From: Selaginella moellendorffii
Taxonomy: Eukaryota; Plantae; Lycopodiophyta
DNA length: 64,000 nt
Assembly (NCBI RefSeq): GCF_000143415.4
Contig: NW_003314323.1
Coordinates: 624,499 to 688,498, forward strand
Direction: 5' to 3'
In this document: positions 1,182-20,297 of the stretch, piece after piece
Layout: every line of letters starts with the position of its first letter
How positions within the stretch are numbered: the stretch's first letter is position 1
The notes under the pieces: generated by a model
Told to the model about the DNA's origin: nothing
The model's database searches: none
What the model saw: only the letters and a program-made list of their open reading frames with translations
Program-made: the position numbers and the translations under genes

Positions 1182-3419
1182 ATGTTTCTTACTTCCAGGC
1201 GATTGAAATGGCAGCAGAGGCTGAGAAGACGGAAGAGAGGCTATTCTAAGCACGCAGCAAAGGAAGAAGTAACCCAACCAAGTCTGGAGGTTCTTTCGTC
1301 CTTGCTCCTGCAGTGCCTGGACGTGGAAGTCGCTCGCCACGTTCACTCCCACATCTCCAATCACGGGCTGGAAGCGTCGCTAGCGGACCAGCTCGTGGCG
1401 ACGTACGTGAGGCTTGGATGTTTGAGTGAAGCTCACCAAGTACTTAACAGGAACTCTTGCTCGGGGCTGGGGACATGGAGTGGGATCATCACGGGGTATG
1501 TCCAGAATGGGCAGCGGGCAGCGGCATTTTTTCTCTTCCGGAAAATGCAGCAGGACGGCATCGCTCCCAACAAGTTCGTGCTGGTGAGAGTCTTGAGCAG
1601 TGGTTGCTCGAGCCTCGCACAGGGAAAGCTGGCTCACGCGTGTTTATCAGAGGCAACGAGTGGCTCCGACCGTGTTGCTGGAAACGCAGCGATCAACATG
1701 TATGGGAAGTTTGGGTGCGTGGAATCGGCAAAGGCAGTGTTTGACAGAGTTTTGGAGCGGGATATCATCACCTGGACGTTGATGGTCTCTGCGTATGCCC
1801 AAAACGGGCATACCCGAGAGGCATTTCAAGTCTTTGGGAAGATGCTGGTGGAGGGGGTGGTGCCAAACAAGGTGACTTTTCTGGCTATACTCAACGCTTG
1901 CTCGAGCTCGTCACAGGCTGGTTTTGTCCATCGGTTGCTCTTTGAGAGCGGGTTCCAGTTCACCGCCATGGTAGAGTCCTCTCTCGTGGACGCGTATGGC
2001 AAATGCAAGAACGTCAGTGCTGCAAGGGCAGTGTTTAGCTCGATGACGGACAAGACCAACGTGGTGACTTGGAACGCTTTCATCAGAGCTTTGGCCAGCA
2101 GCAGAGATGCGAGTGGAGCTCTTCAAACGTTTCGAAGCTTGCTGCTCCAAGGCTTGGTTCCCGACACGGTTACATTCATCAATGCCAGCCAGGGAGCGAA
2201 AACTCCTCCGGAAGCAAAGTACCTCGAAACTTGCCGCCAGGAGAGTGGGGTTCAACTGGACATAGCTCTCGGCAACGCTCTCATCAACATGTTTGGCGGC
2301 AGCAGCCAGGCTTGCGAAGCTCGGAGAGTTTTCGATGCGACTCACAACAAGAACATCGTCTCCTGGAACGCGATGCTGTCGGCTTACTCTCAGAACGGAC
2401 ACTTCGAAGAGACGATCGCACTCTTCAAACAGATGGCCTCGACCAAGACGGTGAAGCCCGATAAGCTTACGTTCGCGTCGGTTCTAAGCTCGTGTGCGAA
2501 CCTCGAGAACCTCCGGGAAGGAAAGCTAGCGCACGCAGCAGCAGTGGAAGCTGGCCTGGAGTTCGCAGTGCCCGTAGCTGCGACGCTCATCCAGATGTAC
2601 TCCAAGTGCCACTGCCTCGAAGAAGCCAGGGACATTTTCAGCCGGAGTCCATCCTCGGACGTGGTAGCGTGGACTGTGATGATCTCGGCCTATGCTCAAA
2701 ACGGTCGACCCCAGGAAGCCATCGCTCTCTTCTTCCGCATGACAGTGCCTCCAGATGGCGTGGCCTTCGCCACCGCCCTGGGAGCCTGTGCGAGTGCCGA
2801 GAACTTGGAGGCCGGAAGAGTGGTCCGAGCACAGATCGTGGAGCTTGGGCTGGACGCTGAGAGGGCGGTGGCCAACGCGGTGCTGGACCTCTACGGCAAG
2901 TGTGCCGAGATCGTCGAGACAGCGGAGATCTTCGGCAGGATGAGGCAGCGAGACAGAGTTTCGTGGAACACTATGGTGGCGGCGTATGCCCGAGCCGGGC
3001 ATACCGCCGGGAGCCTGTGGTGCTTCCGGGCGATGCAGCTGGAGGGCGTTTGTCCGAGCGAGGTGAGCTTGGTGAGCGTGCTCTCGACATACAGCCACGC
3101 GGGTCTCGTCGAGCAGGGCTGCCAGTGCTTCGCCTCCATCGCGAGCGACTATGGGATGGTTCCATCGCGCGAGCAGCAGGGGTGTGTGGTGGATCTCCTG
3201 GGCCGAGCGGGGTCGTGGATTGCGGAGGATTTGATCCGGGTGGTGGCTCCATCCACGTCGAGCTCCGAGCTGTGGAAGGCGGTGTTGAGCGCTTGCAGGA
3301 TCCACTCGGACGTGGAGCTGGGCGAGTGTGCGGCTGCTTGTGTTCTGGAGATGGATCCTGGCAGTGACTCCGCTCATATCATCTTGTCCAGCATCTATGC
3401 TATGGATCATCCAACTTAG
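1182..3419 (+). CDS. PLS-class PPR protein with C-terminal E domain, no DYW; probable organellar RNA-editing factor
   Basis: Intronless 745-aa ORF with repeated motifs (NALINMF, DVVAWTVMISAYAQNG, VSWNAMLSAYSQNG); E domain ELWKAVLSACRIHSDVELGECAA; Arg-rich N-terminus ending RGYS resembles a mitochondrial presequence. Confidence 0.93.
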   Translation: MFLTSRRLKWQQRLRRRKRGYSKHAAKEEVTQPSLEVLSSLLLQCLDVEVARHVHSHISNHGLEASLADQLVATYVRLGCLSEAHQVLNRNSCSGLGTWSGIITGYVQNGQRAAAFFLFRKMQQDGIAPNKFVLVRVLSSGCSSLAQGKLAHACLSEATSGSDRVAGNAAINMYGKFGCVESAKAVFDRVLERDIITWTLMVSAYAQNGHTREAFQVFGKMLVEGVVPNKVTFLAILNACSSSSQAGFVHRLLFESGFQFTAMVESSLVDAYGKCKNVSAARAVFSSMTDKTNVVTWNAFIRALASSRDASGALQTFRSLLLQGLVPDTVTFINASQGAKTPPEAKYLETCRQESGVQLDIALGNALINMFGGSSQACEARRVFDATHNKNIVSWNAMLSAYSQNGHFEETIALFKQMASTKTVKPDKLTFASVLSSCANLENLREGKLAHAAAVEAGLEFAVPVAATLIQMYSKCHCLEEARDIFSRSPSSDVVAWTVMISAYAQNGRPQEAIALFFRMTVPPDGVAFATALGACASAENLEAGRVVRAQIVELGLDAERAVANAVLDLYGKCAEIVETAEIFGRMRQRDRVSWNTMVAAYARAGHTAGSLWCFRAMQLEGVCPSEVSLVSVLSTYSHAGLVEQGCQCFASIASDYGMVPSREQQGCVVDLLGRAGSWIAEDLIRVVAPSTSSSELWKAVLSACRIHSDVELGECAAACVLEMDPGSDSAHIILSSIYAMDHPT

Positions 3420-3901: not shown

Positions 3902-4177
3902 ATGATGAGGCGATTTGGAGTGATGTTCCTGGTGCTCTTGGCGCTGGCGGCGGTGGCCACGGAGGTGGAGGCGCAGCAGCAGTGCTTCAGCGAGCGTGCA
4001 TGCTTGCCGGGAGGATTGGACTGCGATACCTACTGCAAGTCTTGCCATTTCTTCCAAGCGGGCCAGCGATGCGTCAAGTGCAAGGGCGGGAGCTGCGATA
4101 TCTTCTTAAGGTGCATCTGTGATGCACCGTGCAGCTTCTCAAACTGCCCAATGCTCTCAGGCTGGAAAACAGCCTGA
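3902..4177 (+). CDS. Secreted 12-cysteine defensin-like peptide, copy 1
   Basis: Signal peptide MMRRFGVMFLVLLALAAVATEVEA then QQQC..; Cys spacing C5C6C3C2C8C2C4C5C1C3C4C with CxxxC and GxC-x5-CxC; AATAAA at 4218. Confidence 0.85.
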   Translation: MMRRFGVMFLVLLALAAVATEVEAQQQCFSERACLPGGLDCDTYCKSCHFFQAGQRCVKCKGGSCDIFLRCICDAPCSFSNCPMLSGWKTA

Positions 4178-4500
4178 CTCTGTTGCTTGCTTCTCGCAAG
4201 GTGTGTTCTATCCATGAAATAAAAGTGTCAGCTTATGTTAAGGACAAAATTAGTCGTTAAGCCTACTAGCACAGACGGCACAGTTGAAATCCTGTTGGCG
4301 ATCAAGTGGAAGGATGTGAAATCCAGTTTACTTATCCGGGTAAGCTTCGCAAGTAGAGAAAGGAGCTGGTTGATTTTGGTTTTGCTGCCAGTGGTTTAAA
4401 GAATGTTTCATGCCAGAATGCAAGCAGTGGAGCTTTCAGGGGGTCCTGCTTGGTCACAGTAGGCTTCACTGGTACTCGGCAATGATCTGCACTGTCTGCT

Positions 4501-4830
4501 CGCACCGCTGATCGAAAGGCTCAAGCTGGACTTGTTTGTGCCTGGTTTCCAAGAGAGGAAAAAAAGTAAGAACTTTGAAAGATCTCAAGAATTTGGAAGG
4601 ATCTGTAGGTTTTACCTACTATTGGATTCGAACTAATGACCCTCGCCGTATGAAAGCGATACTCTGACCGCTGAGTTAACCGATCTCCTCTTGTAGCCAT
4701 GCCAGGATCGCCTCCGACTGTCTGCATTTGCCCGAATCAGGATGAGGCCCGGATCTCGGCGTCGGCGCTGGCATTTTGGGATACTGCATTCTAGTAGCAG
4801 CGAACAGTGTCTGCGCTCAACACCCTGATC
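4501..4830 (-). pseudogene. Scrambled, mostly inverted AUG5 5' fragments
   Basis: 4501-4585 is the reverse complement of AUG5 exon 2 start/intron 1; 4680-4738 is the reverse complement of the start region; 4740-4810 is upstream sequence in forward orientation; 4811-4830 is reversed again. Confidence 0.8.
4613..4679 (-). pseudogene. trnM-CAU: Plastid-type tRNA-Met(CAU) fragment (positions 7-73) inserted in the AUG5 remnant
   Basis: Minus strand reads TTAACTCAGCGGTCAGAGTATCGCTTTCATACGGCGAGGGTCATTAGTTCGAATCCAATAGTAGGTA: anticodon stem TCGCT/GGCGA around CAT, TTCGAAT T-loop, plastid trnM 3' end ATAGTAGGTA; first 6 nt missing. Confidence 0.8.
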
Positions 4831-4867
4831 ACCCAGGACGATCGAGTTTAAAATCTACCGTACGTTT

Positions 4868-6090
4868 TTAGGGTTCTATAGAAACTTGCTCACCGTACAG
4901 TTTATTTACCGTACAGTCTCTTACATAGAGCTCGGTCTCCACAATAAACTTGGGGTCCTTCGTCGCCAGTAGAGCATGCTCGAGGTAGGGAACCGCACCT
5001 CTACGCGTTATAGAAGCACCACGATCAACTTTGACCTCAATAGGGTTTAGCTCTTCGAACCACGCATTTGCCCGCTCAAGCTCCTCCGCACCAAAAAGCC
5101 CGGTGTAATTCGTTTCGCCTGCAACCGAGTGAGTCTCGCAGGGACATCACAAAGAAGCTCTCGCCTTACCATCTTTAAACATGAGGCTCAGGTACAGGTG
5201 CACAGTACTCGCCACCTTGTAGCACGCAAAATATGAGCTCAGTCTTTCAACGTTTCTTGCACATGATCATCTTTACCATCCGTAACTGCTGGTCGACTCC
5301 CCGATTAGAGCAAACCTGGAGGAACTGTTGGCTGGTTTCATCAGAGCCCGGATAGCTGGCAAAAGCAAACAGCAGATTCATTATGTCCCTGAGTAACTTG
5401 AACGTCGAGTCGTGGATCTGAATATCAACTGAGAAGCACGATTAACTTAGTTGCAAATACATATAACTCACCTTAACGAGCTTCAACGTAGAATCATAGC
5501 ACTGACTTGTAGAAACAAGGCGATCACGATTTACCGCCAACTCCATGAGCGCCTCTGCCATTTTAAACACCTCCCGCAAGCCCATGCCGGATAGCACTGA
5601 GAGACTACGGAAAAGCAAGAATGAATGATCCGGCCTCACCAAGGAAAGCTCTTCCACAATAGACAAGTGCAGAGCAATCATCTGGCACTTCATCAAGAGA
5701 CACTGTACAAAAGAATCAGATCGAACATGGAGTTACTACTACCGGTCGTGCTGCATGGACCAACAATGGTTCGCAACCTGATGAAGGTTTCCAAGCTGCA
5801 GTTCGGGAGAAGGGCGGCTTTCACCTGCAATGTGACTGTCAGAATAAATCGTAACTGGTGCTTGTTACCTTACCAACAGCATAGGCCTTCCATAAACCCT
5901 GTGAACACCACAGTTGGGTGTTGCATACAAAATGAGCGAAAAAAAGGAGTTACCAGATGCGCAAAACATTCTAGCTGCCGATGAGCAGCTCCAGGACTTC
6001 GCCCTTGGAGCGTGAAGCAAAGGAAAGAGCGAAACTGAGCGAAACTGAGTAGGAAACGACTTGTTGTCCAGCTCAGAGCAGCATCTGAGA
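4868..6090 (-). pseudogene. Inverted copy of orphan gene X
   Basis: Reverse complement of about 20700-22060 and 8900-10270 (e.g. SGMGLREVFKMAEALM, NRDRLVSTSQCY) with deletions. Confidence 0.75.
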
Positions 6091-6168
6091 TAAGATCTCT
6101 CTCGCGACTTGTTGTCCAGCTCAGAGCAGCATCTTACATCCAGCTTTATCTTGGTTAAAGTGGCCTGT

Positions 6169-7679
6169 TAAAGTTGCTCGAGCTCGTTACAGGCTGGTTT
6201 TGTGCATCGGTTGCTCTTTGAGAGCGGGTTCCAGTTCAACGCCATGGTAGAGTCCTCTCTCGTGGACGCATATGGCAAATGCAAGAACGTCAGTGCTGCA
6301 ACGACAGTGTTTAGCTCCATGACGGACAAGACCAACGTGGTGTCTTGGAACGCTTTCAACAGAGCTTTGGCCAGCAGCAGAGATGCGAGTGGAGCTCTTC
6401 AAACGTTTCGAAGCTTGCTGCTCCAAGGCTTGGTTCCCGACACGGTTACGTTCATCAATGCCAGCCAGGGAGCGAGAACTCCTCCGGATGCAAAGTATCT
6501 TGAAACTTGCCGCCAGGAGGGTGGGGTTCAACTGGACATAGCTCTCGGCAACGCTCTCATCAACATGTTTGGCGGCAGCAGCCAGGGTTGCGAAGCTCGG
6601 AGAGTTTTCGATGCGACTCACAGTCACAACAAGAACATCGTTTCCTGGAACGCGATGCTGTCGGCTTACTCTCAGAACGGACACTTCGAAGAGACGATCG
6701 CACTCTTTAAACAGATGGCCTACCAAAACAGTCGTTCACGTCGGTTCTAAGCTCGTGTGCGAACCTCGAGAACCTCCGGGAAGGAAAGCTAGCACACGCA
6801 GCAGCAGTGGAAGCTGGCCTGGAGTTTGCAGTGCCCGTAGCTGCTACGCTCATCCAGATGTACTCCAAGTGCCACTGCCTCGAAGAAGCCAGGGACATTT
6901 TCAGCCGGAGTCCATCCTCGGACGTGGTAGCGTGGACTGTGATGATCTCGGCCTATGCTCAGAACGGTCGACCCCAGGAAGCCATCGCTCTCTTCTTCCG
7001 CATAACAGTCCCGCCAGATGGCGTTGGCTTTGCCACCGCTCTGGAAGCCTGTGCGAGAGCCGAGAACTTGGAGGCCGGAGTGGTCCGAGCAAAGATCGTG
7101 GAACTCGGGCTGGACGCTGAGAGGGCGGTGGCCGACGCGGTGCTGGACCTATACGGCAAGTGTGCCGAGATCGTCGAGACAGCGGAGATCTTCGACAGGA
7201 TGAGGCAGCGAGACAGAGTTTCGTGGAACACTATGGTGGCGGCGTATGCCCGAGCCGGGCATACCGCCGGGAGCCTGTGGTGCTTCCGGGCGATGCAGCT
7301 GGAGGGCGTTTGTCCGAGCGAGGTGAGCTTGGTGAGCGTGCTCTCGACATACAGCCACGCGGGTCTCGTCGAGCAGGGCTGCCAGTGCTTCGCCTCCATC
7401 GCGAGTGACTATGGGATGGTTCCATCGCGCGAGCAGCAGGGGTGTGTGGTGGATCTCCTGGGCCGAGCGGGGTCGTGGATTGCGGAGGATTTGATCCGGG
7501 TGGTGGCTCCATCCACGTCGAGCTCCGAGCTGTGGAAGGCGGTGTTGAGCTCTTGCAGGATCCACTCGGACGTGGAGCTGGGCGACTGCGCGGCTGCTTG
7601 CGTTCTGGAGATGGATCCTGGCAGTGACTCCGCTCATATCATCTTGTCCAATATCTATGCTATGGATCATCCAACTTAG
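6169..7679 (+). pseudogene. PPR-E copy 2, 5'-truncated and frameshifted
   Basis: Near-identical to 1897-3419; lacks the first ~240 codons; frame break near 6720-6745; 3' 290 codons remain open. Confidence 0.88.
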
Positions 7680-8142
7680 ATGGAGTTTCTTGAGTGTGAT
7701 CCTCGAAAACCATGCAGAGAAACTTCTCTTGAGGACTTTTCTATAGCCTGTTGACATTGTGACAAGGATATAGTCTGAAAGGATTCTAAGCTTGCGAAGA
7801 AACCATGCGGTGGCAAAGAAGGATATGGTCTTGGTTCCTGCGACGACTTCCTTGGTATGATTTCGCAATGTCGGGCGCTGTCGAAGTTTTAGCCGAGAAT
7901 CCCGAGCGGCTTATTTTCTGGTCCACGGAAGACTTCGGGCCGAGTGGATAAGCACGGAAAATTGTACAAAAGTCTGAGCAGAATGGTGGCGTGCCAGCGA
8001 CTTGAAAATGGTCGCGTTTTTTTGACAAGTTGGCGAGTTTGGTGGGAAGACCAGCGTGATTAAAGTCTTTGCGACTTGAAAGATGGAAAGATGGGGCCCC
8101 AGGAAGTAACTCGGAAGCCCCGGATCATCTCAGCACTCGGTT

Positions 8143-8150
8143 GTATAAAA
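8143..8150 (+). promoter_or_regulatory. TATA box of 12-Cys peptide copy 2
   Basis: GTATAAAA about 70 nt before the ATG; equivalent GTATAAA at 19964 in copy 3. Confidence 0.55.
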
Positions 8151-8214
8151 TCGCAAGCTTTTCTCGAGATCGGTCGCCGATTTAGAGGTTTGCTTGCTCA
8201 TGCTTTGCTCTACG

Positions 8215-8475
8215 ATGAGGCGATTTGGAGTGATGTTCCTGGTGCTCTTGGCGCTGGCGGCGGTGGCCACGGAGGTGGAGGCGCAGCAGCAGTGCTTCCG
8301 CGAGAATGCATGCCTGCCGGGAGGATTGAGCTGCAACTCCTATTGCAAGTCTTGCCATTTCTTCCAGGCGGGCCAGCGATGCGTCAAGTGCAGGGGCGGG
8401 AGCTGCACCCTGTTTGGAAGATGCATCTGTGATGCACCGTGCAGCTTCTCAAACTGTCCAACGTATTCAGGCTAG
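8215..8475 (+). CDS. Secreted 12-cysteine defensin-like peptide, copy 2
   Basis: Same signal peptide and 12-Cys skeleton; ends NCPTYSG*; TATA upstream and AATAAA near 8527. Confidence 0.87.
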   Translation: MRRFGVMFLVLLALAAVATEVEAQQQCFRENACLPGGLSCNSYCKSCHFFQAGQRCVKCRGGSCTLFGRCICDAPCSFSNCPTYSG

Positions 8476-8799
8476 AAAACAGCCTGACTCTGACTCTGTT
8501 GCTTGCGGTGTGTTCTATCTTCATGAAATAAAAGATGTGTTCGGTGTCAGCCTAAGTTAATCAAAAAGAGGACTCGCTTTAAGGAAGGGTAAAGTTTAAC
8601 ATATAAAGCAAAACCCTGTTACAGTTGAAATCCACGGATATCCTGTTGGCGATGAAGCGGAAGGATGTGAAATCCGGGTAAGCTTCGCAAGTAGAGAAAG
8701 GAGCTGGCTGACTTTGTTTTTGCTGCCAGTCGTTTGAAGAATGTTCCACTGCCAGAGCCTACAACGCAAGCAGTGGAGCTTTCGGGGTCCTGCTTGGTC

Positions 8800-10270
8800 A
8801 CGGTAGGCTAGCTAGTTCATTTGGAACTGCTTTCTTCAGGGGTGTTTTGGAGCAGTTGTCGATGATTCCATCGCCAACGGAGTCTTGCTATCCCTTATCA
8901 TAAGATGCTGCTCTGAGCTTGACAACAAGTCGTTTCCTACTCTGGTGTCCAGTGCCGCTCTTTGCTCTGATTCACGCTCCAAGGGAAGTCCTTGAGCTGC
9001 TCATCGGGTTTGGCGAGCAGCTAGAACGTTTTGCGCATCTGGTAACTCCTTTTTTTCGCTCATTTTGTATGCAACACCCAACTGTGGTGTTCACTGGGTA
9101 CCCTAAATGCTCATGCTGTTGGTAAACTAACAAGCACCAGTTATGATTTTCACATCCTAGGTGAGAGCCGCCCTTCTCCCGAACTGCAGCTCGGAAACTT
9201 TGATCAGGTTTCGAACCATTGTTGGTCCATGCAGCACGACCGGTAGTCGTAACTCTTTCCGTGCATGTTTGATCTGAGTCTTTTGTACAGTGTCTCTTGA
9301 TGAAGTGCCAGATGATTGCTCTGCACTTGTCTATTGTGGAGGAGCTTTCCTTGGTGAGGCCGGATCATTCATTCGTGCTTTCCGTAACCGTCTTGTTTGT
9401 ATTGTCTATGGATGCTAAGGACGGAGCAGCGATCCGGCATGGGTTTGCAGGAGGTGTTTAAAATGGCAGGGGCGCTCTTGGCCACCGGTGCGACTCGGCT
9501 GATCCGCAGGGCATTTGACATTATCGAGTTGGCGATAAATCGTGACCGCCTTGTTTATACAAGTCAGTGCTATGGTTCTCTCGTCAAGGTGAGTTATATG
9601 TATTTGCAACTAAGTTAATCGTGCTTAGTAGCGAAGCCATCAAGGCGGCGCACTCGCTTATTACCGATTTTGCAATCTGCAAAATCGAGCTCACGGTTGA
9701 TTTGGCAGTTCTTTCTCATGCTAACAATACCCAAGGGCATTGACAAGTGGCCGGTGGGAAAGGAAGGCCAGGAGAAGACGTTCGCTGTTTGCTTTCGCCC
9801 TCTATCCGGGCTCTGATGAAACCAGCCAACAGTTCCTCCAGGTTTGCTCTAATCGGGGAGTCGACCAACAGTTGCAACGTTGAAAGACTGAGCTCATATT
9901 TTGCGTGCTACAAGGTGGCGAGTACTGTGTACCTGTACCTGAGCCTCATGTTTAAAGATGGTAAGGCGAGAGCTTCTTTGTGATGTCTCTGCGAGACTCA
10001 CTCGGTTGCAGGCGAAACGAGTTACACTTGGCTTTTTGGTGCGGAGGAGCTTGAGCGGGCAAATGCGTGGTTCGAAGAGCTAAACGCGCAATCTATGGAG
10101 GTCAAAGTTGATCGTGGTGCTTCTATAACGCGTAGAAGTGCGGTTCCCTACCTCGAGCATGCTCTACCCAAGTTTATTGTGGAGAACGGCCTTCCTTCCG
10201 AGCTCTAACGCATGTAAGAGACTGTACGGTAGATAAACTGTACGGAGACCAAGTTTCTATAGCACCCTAA
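8800..10270 (+). pseudogene. Orphan gene X copy 2 (disrupted)
   Basis: Colinear with 20600-22060 with several indels, including loss of an intron donor near 9683. Confidence 0.65.
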
Positions 10271-10394
10271 AATGTTCTAGGGCTTAGTGATCGTCAGGGT
10301 GTTGAGCGCAGGGATGAGGCACGGATCTCGGCGTCGGCGCTGGCATTTTGGGATACTGCATTCTAGTAGCAGCGAACACTCTTGATTCGGGCAA

Positions 10395-12542
10395 ATGCAG
10401 GGAGCTGCGTCGGCTGCGCCACAGGCGGAGGCGATCCTGGCATGGCTGCAAGAGGAGATCGGCTACAGATCAGCTGGGGATCACGCATTGCCGTCGCCCG
10501 AGGCGCTGCCGCTGAAATATGCTGCCCGTGTGGAAGTTTTTGGTGGAGAGGGTGAAATCCGACAAGACGGTGGAGACTGCGGCGGAACATCGTCGTCCAT
10601 GGCGGGAGCAGTGGCGCCGCGGAGGAGAGTGGCGATGGGAAAGCCAGGGAGGAGGGCGGCGCCGCTGCCACCACCAAGGCCGGGAAGAAGAGAGGCGATG
10701 GGAAATTCAAGGGGAGGGGCGAGAAGACCCCCGCTGCCAAGGAGGAGAAAGAACGCGAGAGCAAGGCTCTGGAGGGCGATGATTCGAAGGAGCGAGCTCT
10801 CGCGGAGAGGGGTTCGGCGGAGAAGGAGGTGGAGAGATTGAAAGGTGTGATGACAAGGACGTGAAGAGCAGGATGCTGGATCTCTCTCGCGAGGAGGGCG
10901 AGCGCCAGCGAGTTCTGGATGACAAGTTTAATTCGAGGTAAGAAATATAGATCTCTCGAAGTTCTTGAGAACTATAGATCTTTCAAAGTTCTTACTTTTC
11001 TCTCTCTCTCTCTCTCTTGGAAGCCAGACACAAACAAGTCCAGCTTGAGTCTTTCGATCAGCGGTGCGAGCAGACTGTGCGGATCTTTGCCGAGTACCGG
11101 CGAAGATTGGCAAGGTATGTCGACCGTGCTCGAGAGGCACAAAGAGGGAAGCTTGCGGAGTCCAAGAAAGAGCAAGACACAGTGTATGCAACGTCGATCA
11201 AAGGTGACGATCAGATCCTCATAGAGACTGCGCAGGAAAGGAGTATAAGAAAGGCATGCGAGCTGCTATCGTCACAGCTTACTGAGAAGATCACGCTCTC
11301 GTTTCCCTCGTACGAAGGACGAGAGAGCCAAGGTGACGCTCAGGCCACCGAGGTTGCAAAGCTCGGGTTTGAGGAGTGGCTGAGGATATTCTCTCGCGAA
11401 TCTGCCACAAATCATCCACTATTTCGTTATTTGTACCACAAACACCAAGTTAGAATCCTACACTTCATGCAGATTAGCAGCACTCACAAACCTTAGCTTC
11501 TCTGCGTCCGGTCGGATGTCGATCCTCTCCGTTTCTTTGGTGATCAAAGGAACGACTCGAGCAGTATAAGTCGCCATCGCCCGCAAGAGCTGCGTTGGAT
11601 TCTTCAAGAGGCTCAATGCAGCCTCCCGAGAGACAGGTATGGCGGAATGCAAGTTGCTTTTATCTTTCTTCTAGTCATGAAAGTGTCGTTTGCGTTGCAG
11701 AAAGCTCATGTTCAGCAGTTTATGGCAACGGAAGAAGCTCTGAACGAAGCTGTGGGAATCAGCTCTATGCTGGGCCCTGAAGCGATAGCGGCAGCGGAGA
11801 GAAATGCCGATATGGTTGCTGCCAGAGCTGGTGCAGGCGACCCTTCAGCGATGGCGTCAATCTGCCGGATAGCTGCAGCATCACAATACTCGCAAGGTAT
11901 GTAAATTTGTTTCATCCGTCAAACAAGTTTTCTTCTTTTTTTGTTTTCGTATTGTAGGAGCTGAAGCACAAGATGCTGGCATGATAGCCATTGTGGAAGC
12001 GCTGAGGTTCTGTCTCAAGCCTTGCTCTTCTCCGGCGAGCCTTCTGGAAAACCTGGCGCGCTCCATCAACTTGGTTCAGACGCTGAGAGACCTCGTTGGC
12101 AGTGGACGAGCTCTTTTGACAGCAGCAAACATCTCCAGACCCGACTACGAAAAGTAAGAAAAACAAAAGAACAGAACCGTTTTCCATGTCTCACTCCTTT
12201 GGATGCTTTGCTCCAGGACTGCGAATGCGTGCGCTGAGACAACCAGAGAACAGGAGCTGGTTGCTCTCGAGGAGTGGCTACCGAGTCTCAAGCACGCGGT
12301 CCTCGAAGCGGACAAGTGCCTGGAAGATTGCCATCGAGTTCGCGGCTTGGTAAACTTACGCCTCGTTTCATCATCTGGATTTGACACGAATTTTACTTCT
12401 TCTCGCGCAGGTGAACGAGTTGTGGGAGCAGCCAGCCGCAACCGCGGTGGCTTGGATCACGGTCGATGGCCAAAACGCTGCTGCCTGGTTTCGCTCACGA
12501 GCTCCAAAACGAGAAGCAGCTGCTGTGCCGTACAATCCGATG
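10395..12542 (+). pseudogene. AUG5 pseudogene
   Basis: Homologous to 22233-25176; frameshifts at about 10510 and 10580; internal inversion 11391-11627; about 690-bp deletion at 11753. Confidence 0.92.
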
Positions 12543-12659
12543 AAAGTACAGTACAGTTGCCACGTAAGCATTAAAAACCGTTATTGCGGAATATTCGCCA
12601 ATTTGGCGCACCAAAATTAGGGCTAGGACTCCTTAGGGTTCTTGGAAAAGCTCCAAGTT

Positions 12660-13199
12660 CGTCACAATGTCCCGTTGTGCGTGTCGCCACAGCGGGCTGC
12701 ATCGGGTATCCCGTGAACTATGATCCGGGGGATCACGTCATGCCGCCGCCGCCGCCGCCGCAACATGTATGGGCATTTTCTTCGATTTCGATTCGGTCCT
12801 GCTCGATGTCCGGTGTCGTCGCGTTCTGGTCTTGATTTTCCTGGAGCACAGGGATAGATCCAAGGATGAGAATGGTGAGGGGTTTTATTTCCTGTGTAGG
12901 CCAAAGAAATCCATGACTTTGTGGATATTGAGTCCACTGCCGATCACTTGAGAAGCGTCTTATAAAATGGAGGAGCACGCCTGTTAGCAGGGTGAATCCA
13001 AGGTTTACCCGGGAGGTGTCACACATGAAGCTGGATAACATCTGTACCGTGGAAACTCGCGTTCACGACCCAAAGCTCCGGGCTCTCAGTGCTGGTATCT
13101 GAGTGGTGCCAAGGCCGAGGATGTGCCGAGGATGTTCCGGGTAAGCTTTTGTTCTCTTTTCCTTTGAAGTTTGTTTGTTTACTCGTTTCTTCTTTTCAG
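12660..13199 (+). pseudogene. Truncated copy of orphan gene Y
   Basis: Matches 25394-25970; frameshift and stop near 13088-13102; similarity ends exactly at an intron acceptor. Confidence 0.8.
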
Positions 13200-13232
13200 C
13201 TCTCCGTCGCGCCCTGCCCTGGCAATCCGGCC

Positions 13233-14395
13233 ATGGAGCTCTCTTCCATCCTCGAGCGATCTAGCGGCCGCGAATTTCTTGGGGGCGATGCTGCGACCTT
13301 GCGATCGGCCTCACTGGATGTGATCTCGATGCGTTTGAGCACCGGGATCATGAAAAGAAATGGCCATACATCCAAAGGCCTTGTACTTCATATTCTCACT
13401 TCCGAAGAAAAAGGCTACTTTGGTTTCAATTGACGAGACAGTGATGACAGGGACTTCAAAAGAACCAGCTCAACAATACGCTGACCAGATGCTGCACTAC
13501 GAGCTGGAAAATGATGTCGGAAAAGATGCTGTAGAAGTTAGAACCGAGTCTGCTTGTAAGGAATTGTACAGTGGCGATGACAGGAGTACTCCTCAAGTGC
13601 TGAATAGTCAAGTGGACGATTGGACCGAAACAACTACAATCGTCGGTGAGAAGGCTTGGATCCGTGCTTTCTAAGTTAACTCTTGAAACATTTAATCCAG
13701 GTGAAACATTCGGGAGCTTGTTTCCTAAAGAAGAAAGAAGTCACGAAGGTTTGCCACTTTAACATGCTTGCTTTCTTTCTCACTCGCATTACAGGAGGAA
13801 CTTTTAGACGACTATAAACAAGGTTAAAATTGACTGGAGTGCTCTACGGAGTATGAAGTCAAGGCAAGTTTTGTTTGTATGCCAATATTTCTTCTATTTG
13901 GTCTCCTAAATTCTTCTATGCTTGTTGATTGCAGATAGTTGAAATGAAAATGATGATGCTAAACATGAAATCTCAGTATCGGCAGCAGATGACCCGGAAA
14001 AGGCCATATCAATGTGAAACTTCTACAGCTGCCAACGATGAAAGAGTTTTCCTTGGTTACAAGCAACCAAGCGAAACAAAACGTTGATTTTCTGAAGAAG
14101 CAAATGCAAAAGCTTAAGCAGGATAAAGAAAATTTGAGCAGGGAGCTCTTTTCTATGAAAAAGAAGCAGAGGTACGTGTGTCATCATACCAAGCCCGCTT
14201 CTCGAACTAAATTTCTTGCCAGGCAATCTGAGAAGCAGAAGAAAAGCCTTGATGACGCATTGGATAAAGTCTCAGGTCAGCAGACTGCAATTCCAGGAAC
14301 TAAAACAGTATAATGTTCCAAATACCGGTGCTAAACTATTGGGCTTAGTTTAATGATTTCAAAGAACTGGTAAGATTAGACGAAGAGATATTATC
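13233..14395 (+). pseudogene. Second copy of the coiled-coil gene (5' part), frameshifted and interrupted
   Basis: 13771-14395 matches 1-654 with indels; upstream part begins MELSSILERSSG; ends at the AT-rich insertion. Confidence 0.7.
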
Positions 14396-15437
14396 CAAGA
14401 AATTGTAAGTTATAAGTTTTTCTTTTCGAATTTGTTAATTTCACCTCTTTTTTTTCAATTTTCCCAATTTATCTCATCTATCCGACTTGGCTTTAATTAA
14501 CTTCCTTTTGCTAAGGTTTTTGTTTATTATATTAACTTCTACTTGGTTTTACTTGGATTGAGCTATTCATTACATAAGTAATAAGCTATTCATTCATAAA
14601 TTCATAAATTCTTTCTCAATCCCTTTTCCCAAGTTTAATTGGACTTAAAGTTTGGTTACATTCCTTGCAAGCATAAATAACTAAGAACATGAAACATCCA
14701 AATTCTTAACATCCCTAAGTACAATAAAATTTAATCATAAAACCCTTTAAATCCCAAGCCTTAAGTGTATCTATTGTTTTGGGACTTTGGGGGGAAATAC
14801 TATAGCCTAATGGCTTAGTATAAAGACCTCTATTCCCCCATTTCTATCCTAAAAAGAAGGCCCAAGCCTTTATGAAGGAGTGAGATTATATGGTATTTTA
14901 GTGGGGCATTACTTCACATGAATTGGGACTTTCTCTTGAGCATTTCCTTAGGTGACTTTTTTAGCATTATTTGATTTTGTGCTCACTCCCACCCAATGCC
15001 ATTAACTCCTAGTCTCAACTTCAATTCGATTTAAAAGCACCATTAGAAAGTTCCTTTAAGATTGAATCCCTACTATATTTTTGGAATCCCTTGTAGCCCC
15101 CTTTGGGAAATGATTACTTTGGGCTTTCACCCTATGACCTGAATTAGTATTCAGACTCAGTCTCAAATTTTATTTCAAACTTAGTCTCATTTGATGAATT
15201 CTTGTGAGACACAAAATCCCTAGGCCCCAAAGTGGAGCCGAAAGGGTGCCACGTGGTAGTGGCCGAAGCGAAAGCCAAACGAGCGTAACACGTTTAGACC
15301 AAAAGCTCCGACATGAAAAATCGAAAGCGGGAGTGAAATTCTTAACAAAGTGTTCGAGGAACGAGCATGAAACAAGCAATAAGCGAGGCTCCAAAAAAGG
15401 ACCCAAAAGGACCAACACATGACACATGGAAGCGTCC

Positions 15438-15927
15438 AAGATGGACCCGAGATGGATCCAAGTTGGAGTCTAAGGTGGAGTCCAAGATGGAGTTCGAGAT
15501 GGAGTCCGAGGTGGAGTCCGAGATAGACCCGAGATGGACCCGAGTTGGAGTCTAAAGTGGAGTCCGAGGTGGACCCGAAATGGAGTCCGAGTTGGAGTCC
15601 GAGGTGGAGTCCAAGATGGACCCGAGATGGAGTCCGAGATGGACCCAAGATGGAGTTCAAGATGGAGTCCGAGTTGGAGTCCGAGGTGGAATCCGAAATG
15701 GACCCGAGATGGACCCAAGTTGGAGTCCAAGGTGGAGTCCGAGGTGGACCCGAGATGGAGTCCGAGATGGGACCGAGACCGAGACCGAGACTGGGACCAA
15801 GATCGGGACTGAGACCGAGACCGAGACTGAGACCAAGACTGAGACCAAGGCTGAGGCCAAGACCGAGCCCAAGCCCGAGTCCAAGTCCGAGTCCGAGTCC
15901 AAATCCAAGTTCGAGTCCGAGTCCGAG
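15438..15927. repeat. Tandem array of GAGTCC/GAGACC hexamers and GAG(A/G/T)TGGAGTCC 11-12-mers
   Basis: Directly visible; 11-12-mer zone 15438-15770 then pure hexamer zone 15771-15927. Confidence 0.92.
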
Positions 15928-16519
15928 AAAGTGAAAGCCCAAAGCGTGCGTCTCCCAGACCCTGGGGGGTTTGGTGAGCTCCAAAAGTATAGTGGGGGGA
16001 GGACTGCAATGGAGCCAGTTTGGCCAGGAAAGGCCAGTTTGGCCCAGGAAAGCTGTACCCAGTGTTGGGTGATGAGTTGCCCATTGGAAAGTCCAAGACT
16101 AGAGTGAACACAGACCGACAAGCAGGGTAGCTTGGTGAAGTGTTCAAGAGCCGGCTCTAGTTCCCCCGGGAGATCGACTGGCTGATGCTTTTAGTCCAAG
16201 TGTGGGTGGCACTACTTACTTGGATACCTGGTGTGGCTCAACGGAACCTCGCTCTAATCCCACGGCTAAAGCACCCAAAGGCAGAAGGTGGGGAGAGTAC
16301 CCACGAGGCTCGCATAAGGCCACGGTGTTCCGAAATGTCGTCCCAAAGGCCTAGACTGTGGAAAGGAAGAGGAGTAGTCCTCTAGAGTAGAGACCAAAAA
16401 TACAGCTGTGTGGTGAGGAAGTCCCAGAGGACCGTGGGACTTAGTGGTCGGGCTTGTGGGCCTCGATCTAGTGGCAGTGTTGGCAAACACGGCCATAGGT
16501 AGAAAGGGACTTGGTGGGG

Positions 16520-17895
16520 ACTGGAAAAGGGATATTGGGGAAGGCTATTCCTCATGTGTAAAGCTCCTATGTTTGGACTTCCCGGGAGATCACCCAGCCC
16601 AGTACTATTCAAACCCAAGGACACTTAACCCCAAATATCCCAAGACCCTTAACCGATTGGAAAAAGGGGTGCACTCTTGTTCATGGGCCCTTTCCCTCTA
16701 TATTTGAACCCCTATGGATCGTTTCTCAAGTCATTCCCTTTAGTTGCTTACATCATGTTTGTGGGCATCTTAAGGATGATAAGGAGTGGATTTGGGATGA
16801 TCACTCATGGATGGATAGCTCAGTCTTTGAGAGATGGGACTGTGATGTAGATGGTGCCAGACCACCAATGTGACTAAGGTGAATGGGCATGGCCTTAGTG
16901 TAACAGGTTGATATGTCGGTGGTACCTTGGGGTGTCGATCATGGGATTAGACACGTGGAGCACTTAGACCAAGTGCAATGGTTGAGTGGCATGGATGCCA
17001 TTCTTGGGGTTAGTAAGTCCCTAAGTCTAAAATAGGATTTATGGAGGTTATGAGTGAGACTCCTCCAAATGGTTGGAAGTGTGGTTGAGTGACTAAAGTA
17101 GAATGGAATTTACAATTCTTTATCGTTTTAGTTATGATTTCATGGATCCTTTAACCTGTAACACATAAAGGAGTTGATTCTTTATAACTCCACCACCTAT
17201 AAAAGAAATTTGATTGAATGTCTTTATTTAATTTTACTACATATTAAGCATTTCTTTGAGGACATCTCCCCACTCCCTAGCTAAGAGTTCATGATAACAA
17301 GATATAGGTGTTCCTATACCCCTTATCTCATCTTCCCTAGTAAAGGGTTGGGACTTGAACCCAACCTTTGTTGAATACATTTACGGATTTGATATCCCCT
17401 TAGGGAGTTGGGTGTAACTCCTTATGTCTCATTAACCTATGCTAATTAGCTTTGGCAGGTCTTTAGGTCCTAATATATAACATTACTCAATTTCACAAAT
17501 AAATACTTTAATTAAACTTTACATAAGTACATAAAGTTTTACTTATTCCTTCACTAGATCTCAAGTGTTGGCTACATTCTCTTTCGGTTCCCATGTTGCT
17601 TTGTAGAGTTGAACTCTTTTCCACTTTACATGAAATTCTTTCACCTCACGTATTTATTGTTAATGTAAGCAATTAAAAAAAACAGCTTAAAAGACAATTT
17701 ATAAGGGTTCAAATATAGAAAGAAAAAGCTTATGAATAAAAGTGCACCTTTTTTTCTAATTGATTAAAAGTCTTCAGATATTTAGGGTTAAGTGTCTTTG
17801 GGTTTAAATTGTGATATCATGGGAAGTCTAAATTCAAGAGTTTACAATTAGCCCTTGTATGCATTAAGGATAGCTTTATCCTTATGTTCCTTCTC
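16520..17895. repeat. Degenerate inverted repeat, arms about 16520-16755 and 17660-17895, ~900-bp spacer
   Basis: aaacccaaggacacttaaccccaaatatc (16611) versus gatatttagggttaagtgtctttgggttt (17777); ctatatttgaacccc versus agggttcaaatatag; mismatches mostly transitions. Confidence 0.75.
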
Positions 17896-18311
17896 TTTTT
17901 GGATAACTTAATCTTTGCAAAGTGGGTCCTCAAAATACTATTGACATATTAAACATTATTATGACACTCTTCTAAAGCTACATTTTTTAGTTCCTTTTGT
18001 GAAACATACACTCTCACTTGCTTATAATAAATGAGTCTACAGTTCACATAACATATTTTCTCTTTCTTAAATGACTCACTTTTCTAATGAGCATCCTATG
18101 CCTCTTGATTCCTTAACAACATGCTAGACCATCATCCTCATACATTATCTATATATCATTTCCAAAAGTTGCTATTACATTGGATATCATTAACTTTTAA
18201 GTTTATTTTTCAACTTAAAACATTTACCATGATATTATTCTTCCTAAGTTTATAAAAAATCTCACAATTAAACTTAGCCAAAATAATAGCCCATTAACCT
18301 TGTTTTCCCGT

Positions 18312-19516
18312 TTACTGCTCCAAAACTTGTTCCTAACACAATTACATCCATCAATGCTAGCTAGAAAACTCCTCATGAAGCAAAGTACCTTGAAGCTTGC
18401 CACCAGGAGAGTGGGGTTCAACTGGACATAGCTCTCAGCAATGCTCTCATCAACATGTTTGGCAGTAGCAACCAGGCTTGTGAAGCTTGGAAAGTTTTTG
18501 ATGCAACTCATAACAAGAACATTGTCTCCTGGAACGCAATGCTGTCAGCTCACTCTCAGAATGGACACTTCGAAGAGACAATCGCACAGATGGCCTTGAC
18601 GAAGATGGTGAAGCCCAATAAGCTTACATTCGCATGTGCAAACCTCAAGAACCTCCGGGAAGGAAAGCTAGCACACGCAGCAGCAGTGGAAGCTGGCCTG
18701 GAGTTCGCAGTGCCCGTCGCTGCTACGCTCATCCAGATGTACTCCAAGTGCCACTGCCTCGAAGAAGCCAGGGACATTTTCAGCCAGAGTCCATCCTCGG
18801 ACGTGGTAGCATGGACTGTTATGATCTCGGCCTATGCTCAGAACTGTCGACCCCAGGAAGCCATTGCTCTTTTCCGCATGACAGTGCCACCAGATAGTGT
18901 GGCCTTCGCCACTGTGGGAGTTCCGAGAACTTGGAGGCCGGGAGAGCGATCCGATCTAAGATCGTGGAGCTCAGGCTGGACGCTGAGAGGGTGGTGGCCA
19001 ACGCAGTGCTGGACCTCTATGGCAAGTGTGCCGAGATTGTCGAGACAGTGGAGATCTTCGGCAGGATGAGGCAGCCAGACAGAGTTTCGTGGAACACTAT
19101 GGTGGCGGTGTATGCCCGAGCCAGGCATACCGCCGGGAGCTTGTGGTGCTTCCGGGCGATGCAGCTGGAGGGTGTTTGTCGGAGTGAGGTGAGCTTGGTG
19201 AGCGTGCTCTTGGCGTACAGTCACGCAGGGGCTGCCAGTGCTTCGCCTCCATCGTGAGTGACTATAAGATGGTTCCATCACGCGAGCGGCAGGGGTGTGT
19301 GGTGGATCTCCTGCCCCGAGCGGGGTCGTGGATTTCGGAGGATTTGATCCGGGCGGTGGCTCCATCCACACCGAGCTCCGAGCTGTGGAAGGCGGTGTTG
19401 AGCGCTTGCAGGATCCACTTGGACGTGGAGCTGGGCGAGTGCGCGGCTGCTTGCGTTCTCGAGATGGGTCCTGGTAGTGACTCGGCTCATCATTTTGTCC
19501 AACATCTATGGATCAT
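18312..19516 (+). pseudogene. PPR-E copy 3, truncated with multiple frameshifts
   Basis: Homologous to 2143-3410; frameshifts near 18915, 19228 and 19490. Confidence 0.9.
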
Positions 19517-20036
19517 CGAGTGTGATCTTCGAAATTCATGCATAGAAACTTCTCATAGAAACTTCTCCTTGAGGACTTTTCTATGTTGACATTGAGTCTG
19601 AAATGATTCTAGGCTTGTGAAGAAACCATGCGGTGGCAAAGGAGGACATGGTCTTGGTTCCTGCGACGCCTTCCTTGGTATGACTTCGCAATGGCGGTCT
19701 CGAAGGTTTAGCCGAGAATCCCGAGCGGCTTCTTTTCTGGTGATGCATCCACGGAAGACTTCGGGCCGAGTGGATAAGCACGAAAAATTGTAAAGAAGTC
19801 TGAACAGAAAGGTGGCGTGCCAGCGACCTGAAAAATGGTCGCGTTTTTCTGACAAGTCAGTCGATTCTGTGGCGAGTTTGGTGGGAAGACCATGTCATTG
19901 CGACTTCAAATATGGGACCCCAGGAAGTAACTCGGATGCTCCGGATCATCTCAGCACTCAGTGGTATAAATTCGCAAGCTTTTCTCGAGATCGATCGCCA
20001 ATTTAGAGGTTTGCTTTGCTCTTACTTTGCTCTACG

Positions 20037-20297
20037 ATGAGGCGATTTGGAATGATGTTCCTGGTGCTCTTGGCGCTGGCAGCGGTGGCCACGGAGGTGG
20101 AGGCGCAGCAGCAGTGCTTCCGCGAGCGTGCATGCCGGCCGGGAGGATTGAGCTGCGATTCCTACTGCAAGTCTTGCCATTTCTTCCAAGCGGGCCAGCG
20201 ATGCGTCAAGTGCAAGGGCGGGAGCTGCACCCTGTTTGGAAGATGCATCTGTGATGCACCGTGCAGATTCTCAAACTGCCCAACGTATTCAGGCTAG
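20037..20297 (+). CDS. Secreted 12-cysteine defensin-like peptide, copy 3
   Basis: Intact signal peptide plus 12 Cys; TATA at 19964; AATAAA near 20358. Confidence 0.87.
   Translation: MRRFGMMFLVLLALAAVATEVEAQQQCFRERACRPGGLSCDSYCKSCHFFQAGQRCVKCKGGSCTLFGRCICDAPCRFSNCPTYSG

What the first reader, a model, noticed from the sequence alone, without database searches (positions are those of the whole stretch)
3902..20297. Three intact, diversifying 12-Cys defensin-like peptides are the only survivors of a triplicated cassette
Seen: every other cassette gene is intact in at most one copy, but all three peptide ORFs keep the signal peptide and all 12 Cys. Changes concentrate in the mature part: gamma-core loop GSC-DIFL-RCIC versus GSC-TLFG-RCIC by multi-nucleotide change, FSER/FREN/FRER, DCDT/SCNS/SCDS. 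The adjacent PPR copies 1 and 2 are nearly identical. The spacing C5C6C3C2C8C2C4C5C1C3C4C contains the defensin CxxxC..GxC..CxC core plus four extra Cys, and lacks the CC of 12-Cys snakin/GASA. Inference: an unclassified six-disulfide peptide family under diversifying selection (antimicrobial or recognition ligand) that may have favoured retention of the duplication.
Basis: partly seen in the sequence, partly recalled or inferred. Interest (0 to 1): 0.75.

Follow-up and report, generated by a model that had tools for sequence, protein, structure and literature searches.

The report
Copsin-like defensin genes in spikemoss
Three neighbouring small genes of the spikemoss Selaginella moellendorffii encode secreted 12-cysteine peptides that belong with the mushroom antibiotic copsin and, more closely, with a bacteriocin-like peptide of an actinobacterium.

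Summary
Three intronless ORFs (3905-4177, 8215-8475, 20037-20297, + strand) each keep a signal peptide, an N-terminal Gln and 12 Cys with the stated spacing. The flanking PPR and HAUS5 genes look intact in one cassette copy each.

- **Family:** it is not unclassified. The only Pfam hit is PF18251, "Fungal defensin Copsin", and a profile search of the PDB puts copsin (2MN5) first.
- **Closest relative:** among 1.84 billion proteins it is a 77-aa leader-bearing peptide of an Actinomycetales MAG (about 50% identity), which sits in a bacteriocin-type operon.
- **Selection:** diversifying selection is not supported. dN/dS in the mature part is 0.38-0.74, and its divergence equals that of the 3' flank. 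The contrast with the near-identical PPR copies comes from a recombination or gene-conversion breakpoint at the signal/mature boundary.
- **Constraint:** the second haplotype also has all three genes intact. Allelic changes there are 5 non-synonymous to 8 synonymous (p = 0.0013), which indicates purifying selection.

Expression and activity are untested, and structure prediction failed.

The scan reported the same family before, on the other haplotype (s1-419394). I reached the same reading independently.

The parts
3905..4177 (+). Peptide gene c1. It encodes a 90-aa precursor in this haplotype and a 67-aa mature peptide with net charge +2. In-frame upstream ATGs lie at 3869 and 3902. The stop codon is lost (TAG to TGG), adding WKTA.
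   Evidence: The other haplotype's allele keeps the TAG.
8215..8475 (+). Peptide gene c2. It encodes an 86-aa precursor and a 63-aa mature peptide with net charge +4. An in-frame upstream ATG lies at 8200.
   Evidence: Pfam PF18251 scores 25.7 bits against a gathering threshold of 25.
20037..20297 (+). Peptide gene c3. It encodes an 86-aa precursor and a 63-aa mature peptide with net charge +6.
   Evidence: Pfam PF18251 scores 22.0 bits.
8144..8149 (+). TATA-like box 71 nt upstream of the c2 ATG. The counterpart for c3 is at 19965-19970. It is absent upstream of the window's c1, where 12 nt are deleted.
   Evidence: It is present in all three copies of the other haplotype. Promoter function is inferred only.
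8527..8532 (+). AATAAA poly(A)-signal-like hexamer 52 nt after the c2 stop. The counterparts are 4218-4223 for c1 and 20358-20363 for c3.
8259..8298 (+). Approximate recombination or gene-conversion breakpoint, at +44 to +84 of the CDS in c2 coordinates. Upstream, c1 and c2 are sisters. Downstream, c2 and c3 are sisters.
   Evidence: Informative sites run 126/29/14 upstream against 2/9/25 downstream, giving chi2 = 82.
1182..3419 (+). PPR gene of cassette copy A (E-type, 745 aa). This is the only open copy. The copies at about 6174-7679 (B) and about 18312-19589 (C) are truncated or frame-broken.
22233..25160 (+). HAUS5 (augmin subunit 5) gene of cassette copy C, with an open first exon. Copy B, at about 10395-12574, has a frameshifted first exon and lacks internal exons.
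   Evidence: A full spliced model was not built.

Best explanation
The three ORFs are functional, intronless genes of Selaginella moellendorffii. They encode secreted peptides of the copsin type, that is, CS-alpha-beta (cis-)defensins with 12 cysteines.

**Shown.**
- The ORFs are intact in both haplotypes.
- They are under purifying selection.
- They are homologous to an actinobacterial 12-Cys peptide.
- Their only family and structure matches are to copsin.

**Inferred mechanism.**
- The precursor enters the ER, and the signal peptide is cut after VEA.
- The new N-terminal Gln cyclises.
- Six disulfides lock a compact, cationic (+2 to +6) peptide of about 6.7 kDa, which is released to the apoplast.
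- There, like copsin, it most likely binds the cell-wall precursor lipid II of Gram-positive bacteria and blocks peptidoglycan synthesis.

**History of the three copies.**
- They arose with a segmental triplication of a PPR-peptide-HAUS5 cassette.
- Later exchange between copies made the locus mosaic.
- The copies differ mainly in surface loops and in net charge.
- The redundant PPR and HAUS5 copies decayed, while every peptide copy stayed under constraint.
For: **Organism and annotation.** The best hit in 1.84e9 proteins is EFJ26050.1 SELMODRAFT_413459. This is a 767-aa model that fuses the peptide ORF to HAUS5 exons.

**Gene features.**
- The signal peptide ends at VEA|QQQ, and all 12 Cys are present.
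- TATA-like and AATAAA elements are present.

**Family.**
- PF18251 is the only Pfam hit at E <= 10 for all copies, for P0001 and for the bacterial relative.
- The family profile against the PDB puts copsin 2mn5_A first, at E = 0.0016, with the Cys aligned.
- CxxxC, GxC and CxC elements are present.
- Published copsin paralogues have an N-terminal Gln, 12 Cys and a 57-65 aa mature peptide (PMC6461984).
- ESM-feature neighbours are all CS-alpha-beta families (a lead only).

**Bacterial relative.**
- P0002 matches at E = 1.2e-6 and is about 50-52% identical.
- Its similarity goes far beyond the Cys framework: z about 10, and 0 of 5000 Cys-preserving shuffles reach it.
- It sits in an operon with a lasso-B2-like protease, a sub-threshold 'actinodefensin-associated protein B' (NF038044), a MauE-like protein and an ABC exporter.

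**Constraint.**
- There is no indel in any CDS, whereas the flanks are gap-rich.
- The neutral survival probability is 2e-3 to 6e-7.
- The second haplotype has all three copies intact.
- Allelic N:S is 5:8 against an expected 4:1, p = 0.0013.

Against: - There is no expression evidence. No protein or called gene of this length is on record in the large collections.
- The Pfam scores are marginal: 22.0-25.7 bits against a threshold of 25.
- phmmer with a single copy did not find copsin in the PDB.
- AlphaFold models were unusable (pLDDT 54 and 41), so the fold and the disulfide map are unverified.
- There is no pro-peptide, unlike copsin.
- Lipid II binding is pure analogy. Many plant defensin-like peptides are signals, not antibiotics.
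- The window's c1 allele lacks the TATA-like box and its stop codon.
Confidence: 0.7

Rival explanations
1. The peptides form an unclassified six-disulfide family whose mature part is under diversifying (positive) selection, and that selection favoured retention of the triplication.
For: - Replacements cluster in the mature part, especially the C8-C9 loop (9 nt across codons 65-69) and the tail (4 nt in codons 83-84).
- Net charge differs between copies: +2, +4 and +6.
- On the c1 stem branch, a rough hand count gives about 14 non-synonymous to 2-3 synonymous nucleotide changes, so dN/dS is near 1.
Against: - Pfam and PDB matches are to copsin.
- All pairwise dN/dS values are below 1.
- Mature-part divergence equals flank divergence.
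- The topology switch explains the contrast with the PPR copies.
- Allelic comparisons show purifying selection.
- Clustered multi-nucleotide changes are what complex mutations or micro-conversions would produce.
Confidence: 0.1
2. The fold is the same, but the job is different. The peptides are signalling or recognition ligands, like the LURE, SCR/SP11 and other DEFL peptides of seed plants, and not antibiotics.
For: - Plant defensin-like peptides have been recruited repeatedly as ligands (established knowledge).
- The paralogues differ in exposed loops.
Against: - The nearest relatives with any functional context are an antibacterial fungal peptide (PMC6461984) and a peptide in a bacteriocin-type operon.
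- The mature peptides are cationic.
- No receptor or expression data exist.
Confidence: 0.15
3. The ORFs are short, untranscribed relics that remain open by chance or through gene conversion between copies.
For: - There is no transcript or protein record.
- The ORFs are short (258 nt).
- The window's c1 allele lost its TATA-like box and its stop codon.
- There is evidence of exchange between copies.
Against: - Six of six ORFs across the two haplotypes are intact, with all 12 Cys.
- There are no indels in the CDS, while the flanks are gap-rich.
- The neutral survival probability is at most 2e-3.
- The allelic N:S ratio departs from neutral, p = 0.0013.
Confidence: 0.05

Closest known systems
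Copsin (CPP1) and its paralogues CPP2-7 of Coprinopsis cinerea (Pfam PF18251 Defensin_5; PDB 2MN5)
   Same: - Twelve Cys in the same order, with CxxxC, GxC and CxC elements.
- Shared local motifs, for example C[KR]SCH and CV[KR]C.
- An N-terminal Gln on the mature peptide.
- A mature length within 57-65 aa.
- A secreted, cationic peptide.
- Tandem paralogues.

Sources; PMC6461984.
   Different: - The host is a plant, not a fungus.
- There is no pro-peptide between the signal and the mature peptide.
- Loop lengths differ: 5/6/8/5/4 here against 6/7/6/7/2 in copsin. The copsin spacing is from my memory of its sequence, and only residues 8-54 were shown by a tool.
- The sequence match is marginal (22-26 bits).
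- Activity is untested.
P0002, a 77-aa peptide of the MAG 'Actinomycetales bacterium isolate RSA1' (PKFB01000033.1)
   Same: - It is the closest relative found anywhere, about 50-52% identical over the 12-Cys domain.
- The N-terminal halves are nearly identical, sharing ENAC.P.GLSC.SYC[KR]SCH.
- The similarity exceeds the Cys framework by z of about 10.

Sources.
   Different: - It has an acidic leader instead of a signal peptide.
- It sits in a bacterial operon with a protease, a MauE-like protein and an ABC exporter.
- Its C-terminal tail is shorter.
- It is a singleton in the databases.
Actifensins / 'actinodefensins' (defensin-like bacteriocins of Actinomyces; PMC6989792, PMC12284004)
   Same: - They are a precedent for CS-alpha-beta defensins in actinobacteria that carry a leader, are exported by ABC transporters and are over 50% identical to eukaryotic defensins.
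- A neighbour of P0002 resembles 'actinodefensin-associated protein B' (E = 1.9e-9, below the cutoff).
   Different: - Actifensins have 6 Cys and a 37-aa mature peptide.
- No NCBIfam model hits P0002 or the Selaginella peptides, even at E <= 10.
Classical plant defensins (PF00304) and snakin/GASA (PF02704)
   Same: - They are secreted, Cys-rich and cationic.
- Plant defensins share the CS-alpha-beta core motifs.
- Snakins also have 12 Cys.
   Different: - Neither family gives a Pfam hit at E <= 10.
- Plant defensins have 8 Cys.
- Snakins have a CC pair and a different spacing.

Membership tests
Copsin-type 12-Cys CS-alpha-beta defensin (Pfam PF18251) | Score at or above the Pfam gathering threshold (25 bits) | tested here: inconclusive
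   c2 scores 25.7 bits and passes. c1 (22.5), c3 (22.0) and P0001 (22.8) fall below. It is the only family hit at E <= 10.
Copsin-type 12-Cys CS-alpha-beta defensin (Pfam PF18251) | Twelve Cys in the family's order, including CxxxC ... GxC ... CxC | tested here: met
   All six alleles have 12 Cys. The profile alignment to 2mn5_A keeps the Cys in register over residues 8-54.
Copsin-type 12-Cys CS-alpha-beta defensin (Pfam PF18251) | Mature peptide of 57-65 aa beginning with Gln (PMC6461984) | tested here: met
   The mature peptide is 63 aa (67 in the window's c1) and starts QQQC after VEA. The cleavage site is predicted by the -3/-1 rule and has not been measured.
Copsin-type 12-Cys CS-alpha-beta defensin (Pfam PF18251) | Pre-pro precursor (signal peptide plus pro-peptide) | tested here: not met
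   The signal peptide abuts the Cys domain directly, and the precursor is only 86 aa. This is a feature of the fungal precursors, not of the domain.
Copsin-type 12-Cys CS-alpha-beta defensin (Pfam PF18251) | CS-alpha-beta fold with six disulfides | tested here: inconclusive
   Two AlphaFold2 runs gave pLDDT 54 and 41, too poor for a fold search.
Copsin-type 12-Cys CS-alpha-beta defensin (Pfam PF18251) | Lipid II binding and activity against Gram-positive bacteria | not testable with these tools
   This needs recombinant peptide and assays.
Snakin/GASA (PF02704) | GASA domain with 12 Cys including a CC pair | tested here: not met
   There is no Pfam hit at E <= 10 and no CC in the sequence.
Classical plant defensin (PF00304 gamma-thionin) | Eight-Cys gamma-thionin domain | tested here: not met
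   There is no Pfam hit at E <= 10. NaD1 and NsD7 appear only at E of 4-10 in the PDB profile search.
Actifensin/actinodefensin bacteriocins | Match to the NCBIfam precursor model; six-Cys mature peptide | tested here: not met
   No NCBIfam hit for P0002 or the Selaginella peptides at E <= 10. Only a neighbouring gene of P0002 resembles NF038044, at 37.9 bits against a cutoff of 45.

The most novel reading that the evidence does not exclude
A copsin-type antibiotic peptide gene crossed kingdoms. An ancestor of Selaginella acquired it from an actinobacterium-like or fungal donor. The gene then gained a eukaryotic signal peptide, promoter and poly(A) signal, and was amplified by segmental duplication. 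This would be a domesticated microbial bacteriocin serving as a plant immune effector.

The reverse direction, from a eukaryote to the bacterium, is not excluded.
Probability: 0.4. Interest if true: 0.7.

Novelty: new member of a known kind. Interest (0 to 1): 0.45.

Why it matters
Copsin-type six-disulfide defensins are described only from mushrooms, where they are unusually stable lipid II-binding antibiotics. Finding constrained members in a lycophyte, with an even closer relative in an actinobacterial bacteriocin-type operon, matters in several ways.
- It widens the family to three kingdoms.
- It offers a testable case of inter-kingdom transfer of an antimicrobial peptide.
- It adds three natural sequence variants, with net charge +2, +4 and +6 and different loops, for structure-activity work.
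- It corrects a public annotation, in which the peptide ORFs are fused to HAUS5 pseudogene exons.
- It shows how mosaic gene conversion can mimic a signal of diversifying selection.

Tried and rejected
- **Word-index protein searches.** Searches with c2 and with P0002 found nothing new.
- **Single-sequence PDB search.** phmmer with c2 gave only chance hits, to ribosomal protein L31 and a cytochrome c.
- **Structure prediction.** Two runs, with 3-row and 5-row alignments, gave unusable models (pLDDT 54 and 41). I therefore ran no fold search.
- **Genome and metagenome scans.**
  - The genome scan returned only the same MAG (L006).
  - The metagenome scan returned the same organism (L007) and a spurious partial match (L008, a 147-aa protein without the Cys pattern).
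- **P0003.** This 1022-aa repeat protein is a chance, low-complexity hit.
- **Further copies.** There are none in the window (tblastn).
- **Exact-protein look-up.** A look-up of c3 found no called gene or transcript.
- **Literature.** Searches found no paper linking copsin, or this peptide family, to Selaginella, and nothing on 'actinodefensin'. The original copsin paper (PMC4263892) is not held.
  - I did not use the third word-index search. A 22-bit relationship cannot reach significance in a database of 5.8e9 sequences.
Full report
**What is there**

The window is plant DNA. The best hit of the peptide profile among 1.84 billion representative proteins is EFJ26050.1, SELMODRAFT_413459 of Selaginella moellendorffii.

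Self-comparison shows a three-fold segmental duplication:
- copy A, about 1182-6094;
- copy B, about 6174-13100;
- copy C, about 18312-25842.

Each copy carries a PPR gene, a small Cys-rich ORF, and (in B and C) a HAUS5/augmin-5 gene. Copy A has only inverted fragments of the block that follows the peptide gene in B and C.

The three small ORFs are c1 3905-4177, c2 8215-8475 and c3 20037-20297, all on the + strand. Each encodes, in order:
- MRRFG;
- a 13-residue hydrophobic core;
- TEVEA;
- a mature part that begins QQQC and has 12 Cys.

c2 and c3 have a TATA-like box at -71/-72. All three have AATAAA 41-61 nt after the stop. The genes are intronless.

The public model fuses the c2-type ORF to downstream HAUS5 exons (P0001, 767 aa). 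On the other haplotype the c1 ORF is fused in the same way. HAUS5 has its own start about 1.9 kb downstream, so these fusions are annotation artefacts.

**Are the neighbours really broken?**

- The PPR gene is one 745-aa open frame only in copy A. In B it starts inside the repeat array and changes frame. In C it is in pieces.
- HAUS5 exon 1 is open in C (22233-22808) and frameshifted at the same place in B (10395-10841). B also lacks internal exons that C has.

I did not build spliced models, so the claim 'intact in at most one copy' is supported but not proven for HAUS5.

**Is retention more than chance?**

Yes, on four counts.
- The CDS has no gap column in any pair, whereas the 150 nt before it and the 140 nt after it have 9-73 gap columns.
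- A crude neutral simulation used per-lineage substitution rates of 3-7% and an indel rate one tenth of that. It gives 0.008-0.13 for one lineage keeping frame, length and 12 Cys, and 6e-7 to 2e-3 for three lineages.
- I fetched the second haplotype (L009, GL377585.1). It is 91-98% identical to the window and has all three genes intact.
- Between alleles, the mature parts differ by 5 non-synonymous and 8 synonymous changes. Neutrality predicts about 4:1, so binomial p = 0.0013. This is purifying selection on all three genes taken together.

**What family is it?**

Pfam gives one hit only, even at E <= 10: PF18251 Defensin_5, 'Fungal defensin Copsin'.
- c1 scores 22.5 bits, c2 25.7 and c3 22.0, against a gathering threshold of 25.
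- P0001 and the bacterial relative give the same single hit.

A profile of the family searched against all PDB sequences puts copsin (2mn5_A) first, at E = 0.0016, with the cysteines in register across residues 8-54 of 57. Classical plant defensins appear only at E of 4-10.

The published description of copsin and its paralogues fits these peptides: a mature peptide of 57-65 aa, a conserved N-terminal glutamine, 12 Cys, and tandem paralogues (PMC6461984). Protein-language-model neighbours are all CS-alpha-beta families, namely scorpion toxins, nematode ABFs, drosomycin, termicin and plant DEFLs (a lead only).

Snakin/GASA and gamma-thionin models do not match. The family is therefore not unclassified. 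It is a plant member of the copsin type, though the sequence evidence is marginal and the fold could not be confirmed (pLDDT 54 and 41).

**Closest relative**

An exhaustive HMMER search found only two true hits: the Selaginella model itself, and P0002 (E = 1.2e-6).

*The peptide.*
- It is 77 aa, with an acidic leader of about 26 residues and a 12-Cys core about 50-52% identical to the plant peptides.
- The N-terminal halves are nearly the same: CLNENACIPPGLSCASYCRSCH against CFRENACLPGGLSCNSYCKSCH.
- Shuffling its non-Cys residues while keeping the Cys positions never approached the observed score (z about 10, 0 of 5000). The likeness is therefore homology, not a shared framework.

*It is native to the bacterium.*
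- It lies on a 234-kb contig of 'MAG: Actinomycetales bacterium isolate RSA1'.
- It recurs in many metagenome samples.
- It has a Shine-Dalgarno-like GGGGGAG and a GC3 of 0.74, against 0.78-0.82 in its neighbours.

*Its operon.* The genes that follow it are:
- a transglutaminase-fold protein resembling lasso-peptide B2 proteases;
- a 522-aa protein of unknown function;
- an 81-aa protein resembling NCBIfam 'actinodefensin-associated protein B' (E = 1.9e-9, below the cutoff);
- a MauE-like membrane protein;
- an ABC exporter on the opposite strand.

This layout recalls the actifensin loci of Actinomyces, where defensin-like bacteriocins with leaders sit beside ABC transporters, hydrolases and small unknown genes (PMC6989792). 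In the plant, the peptide genes match their PPR neighbour in composition (GC3 of 0.72-0.75 against 0.69). Neither side is a contaminant.

**Is there diversifying selection?**

The evidence says no, at least not as a gene-wide or sustained process.
- **Pairwise rates.** Nei-Gojobori dN/dS in the mature part is 0.39 (c1-c2), 0.74 (c1-c3) and 0.38 (c2-c3). It is 0.13-0.52 between alleles.
- **Flank comparison.** Mature-part nucleotide divergence is 13.8%, 10.6% and 5.3%. That does not differ from the 3' flank at 10.3%, 12.4% and 6.6% (Fisher p = 0.30, 0.65, 0.70).
- **The PPR contrast.** This reflects a change of genealogy:
  - From -1800 to -150, informative sites group c1 with c2 (126, against 29 and 14).
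  - From +69 to +400 they group c2 with c3 (25, against 9 and 2).
  - The switch falls between +44 and +84 of the CDS, with chi2 = 82 and p = 1.6e-18.
  - Unequal exchange or gene conversion therefore joined a young 5' block (PPR, promoter, signal) to an older 3' block in copy A or copy B.

- Seven replacements are shared by both c1 alleles: S39D, S42T, T65D, L66I, G68L, T83M and Y84L.
- By a rough hand count from the codon table, that is about 14 non-synonymous nucleotide changes against 2-3 synonymous, so dN/dS is near 1.
- Thirteen of those nucleotide changes sit in two clusters, at codons 65-69 and 83-84.
- Two readings fit: a short adaptive burst in the loop between C8 and C9, or two complex mutational or micro-conversion events. 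I cannot tell them apart here.
- Since the haplotypes split, c1 has been under constraint (3 N to 5 S changes, dN/dS 0.13).

**State of the window's c1 allele**

Compared with c2, c3 and its own allele on the other haplotype, it has two changes:
- a 12-nt deletion that removes the TATA-like box;
- a TAG to TGG change that extends the peptide by WKTA.

The other haplotype's c1 has TATAAAA at -61 and a normal stop. This allele may be starting to decay, or may simply be a variant.

**How it probably works**

*Shown:* the sequence features, the constraint and the homology.

*Inferred:*
- co-translational secretion, with cleavage after VEA;
- pyroglutamate formation at the N-terminal Gln;
- six disulfides giving a compact, protease-resistant, cationic peptide (+2, +4 and +6);
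- antibacterial action by binding lipid II, as reported for copsin (PMC6461984).

I put about 0.7 on 'functional secreted copsin-type defensin'. Within that, I put roughly even odds on lipid II-directed antibacterial action, as against another target or a signalling role.

**Origin**

Three facts make inter-kingdom transfer a serious possibility:
- about 50% identity between a lycophyte peptide and an actinobacterial one;
- no other plant hit in 1.84e9 proteins;
- an intronless gene.

But small plant peptides are badly under-annotated, only one bacterial homologue is known, and no tree could be built. Direction, and even the occurrence of transfer, remain open (probability about 0.4).

**Relation to earlier scan notes**

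I had the Pfam copsin hit before opening the notes. Note s1-419394 reports the same family on the other haplotype, with the same copsin and actinobacterium reading. My searches reproduced it independently and added four things:
- the selection tests;
- the mosaic breakpoint;
- the two-haplotype comparison;
- the operon annotation.

Noticed in passing
window 8215-14313; L009 4311-7991 and 10001-14278: Public gene models, such as EFJ26050.1 (767 aa), fuse the peptide ORF to exons of a decayed downstream HAUS5 copy. The peptide genes are therefore invisible as such in protein databases.
   Followed up: partly
L001 7695-15128 (Actinomycetales MAG RSA1, PKFB01000033.1): The operon around the bacterial 12-Cys peptide contains an S9 peptidase, a lasso-B2-like transglutaminase-fold protease, a 522-aa protein of unknown function, an 81-aa 'actinodefensin-associated protein B'-like protein, a MauE-like membrane protein and an ABC exporter. 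It looks like an undescribed 12-Cys class of defensin-like bacteriocin locus.
   Followed up: partly
window 3849-3905 and 4163-4177: The window's c1 allele alone lacks the TATA-like box (12-nt deletion) and has TAG changed to TGG at the stop. The other haplotype's c1 has both intact.
   Followed up: yes
window 11438-11627 versus 23259-23448: A 190-bp segment inside the HAUS5 region is 97.9% identical but inverted between copies B and C.
   Followed up: no
window 4844-6094 versus 8894-10272 and 20696-22081: In copy A, the block that follows the peptide gene in copies B and C is present in inverted orientation. This suggests an inversion at the A/B junction.
   Followed up: no
window 15220-16150: This is a low-complexity stretch of degenerate short tandem repeats. 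Long ORFs on both strands read as GLGLGL or SRSRS-type repeats. It lies between copies B and C.
   Followed up: no
window 83-644 versus 13833-14392: A 560-bp segment upstream of copy A recurs (91.5% identical) after copy B. It encodes a coiled-coil-like ORF that is also used as the C-terminus of the fused model P0001. It may mark the true repeat-unit boundary.
   Followed up: no
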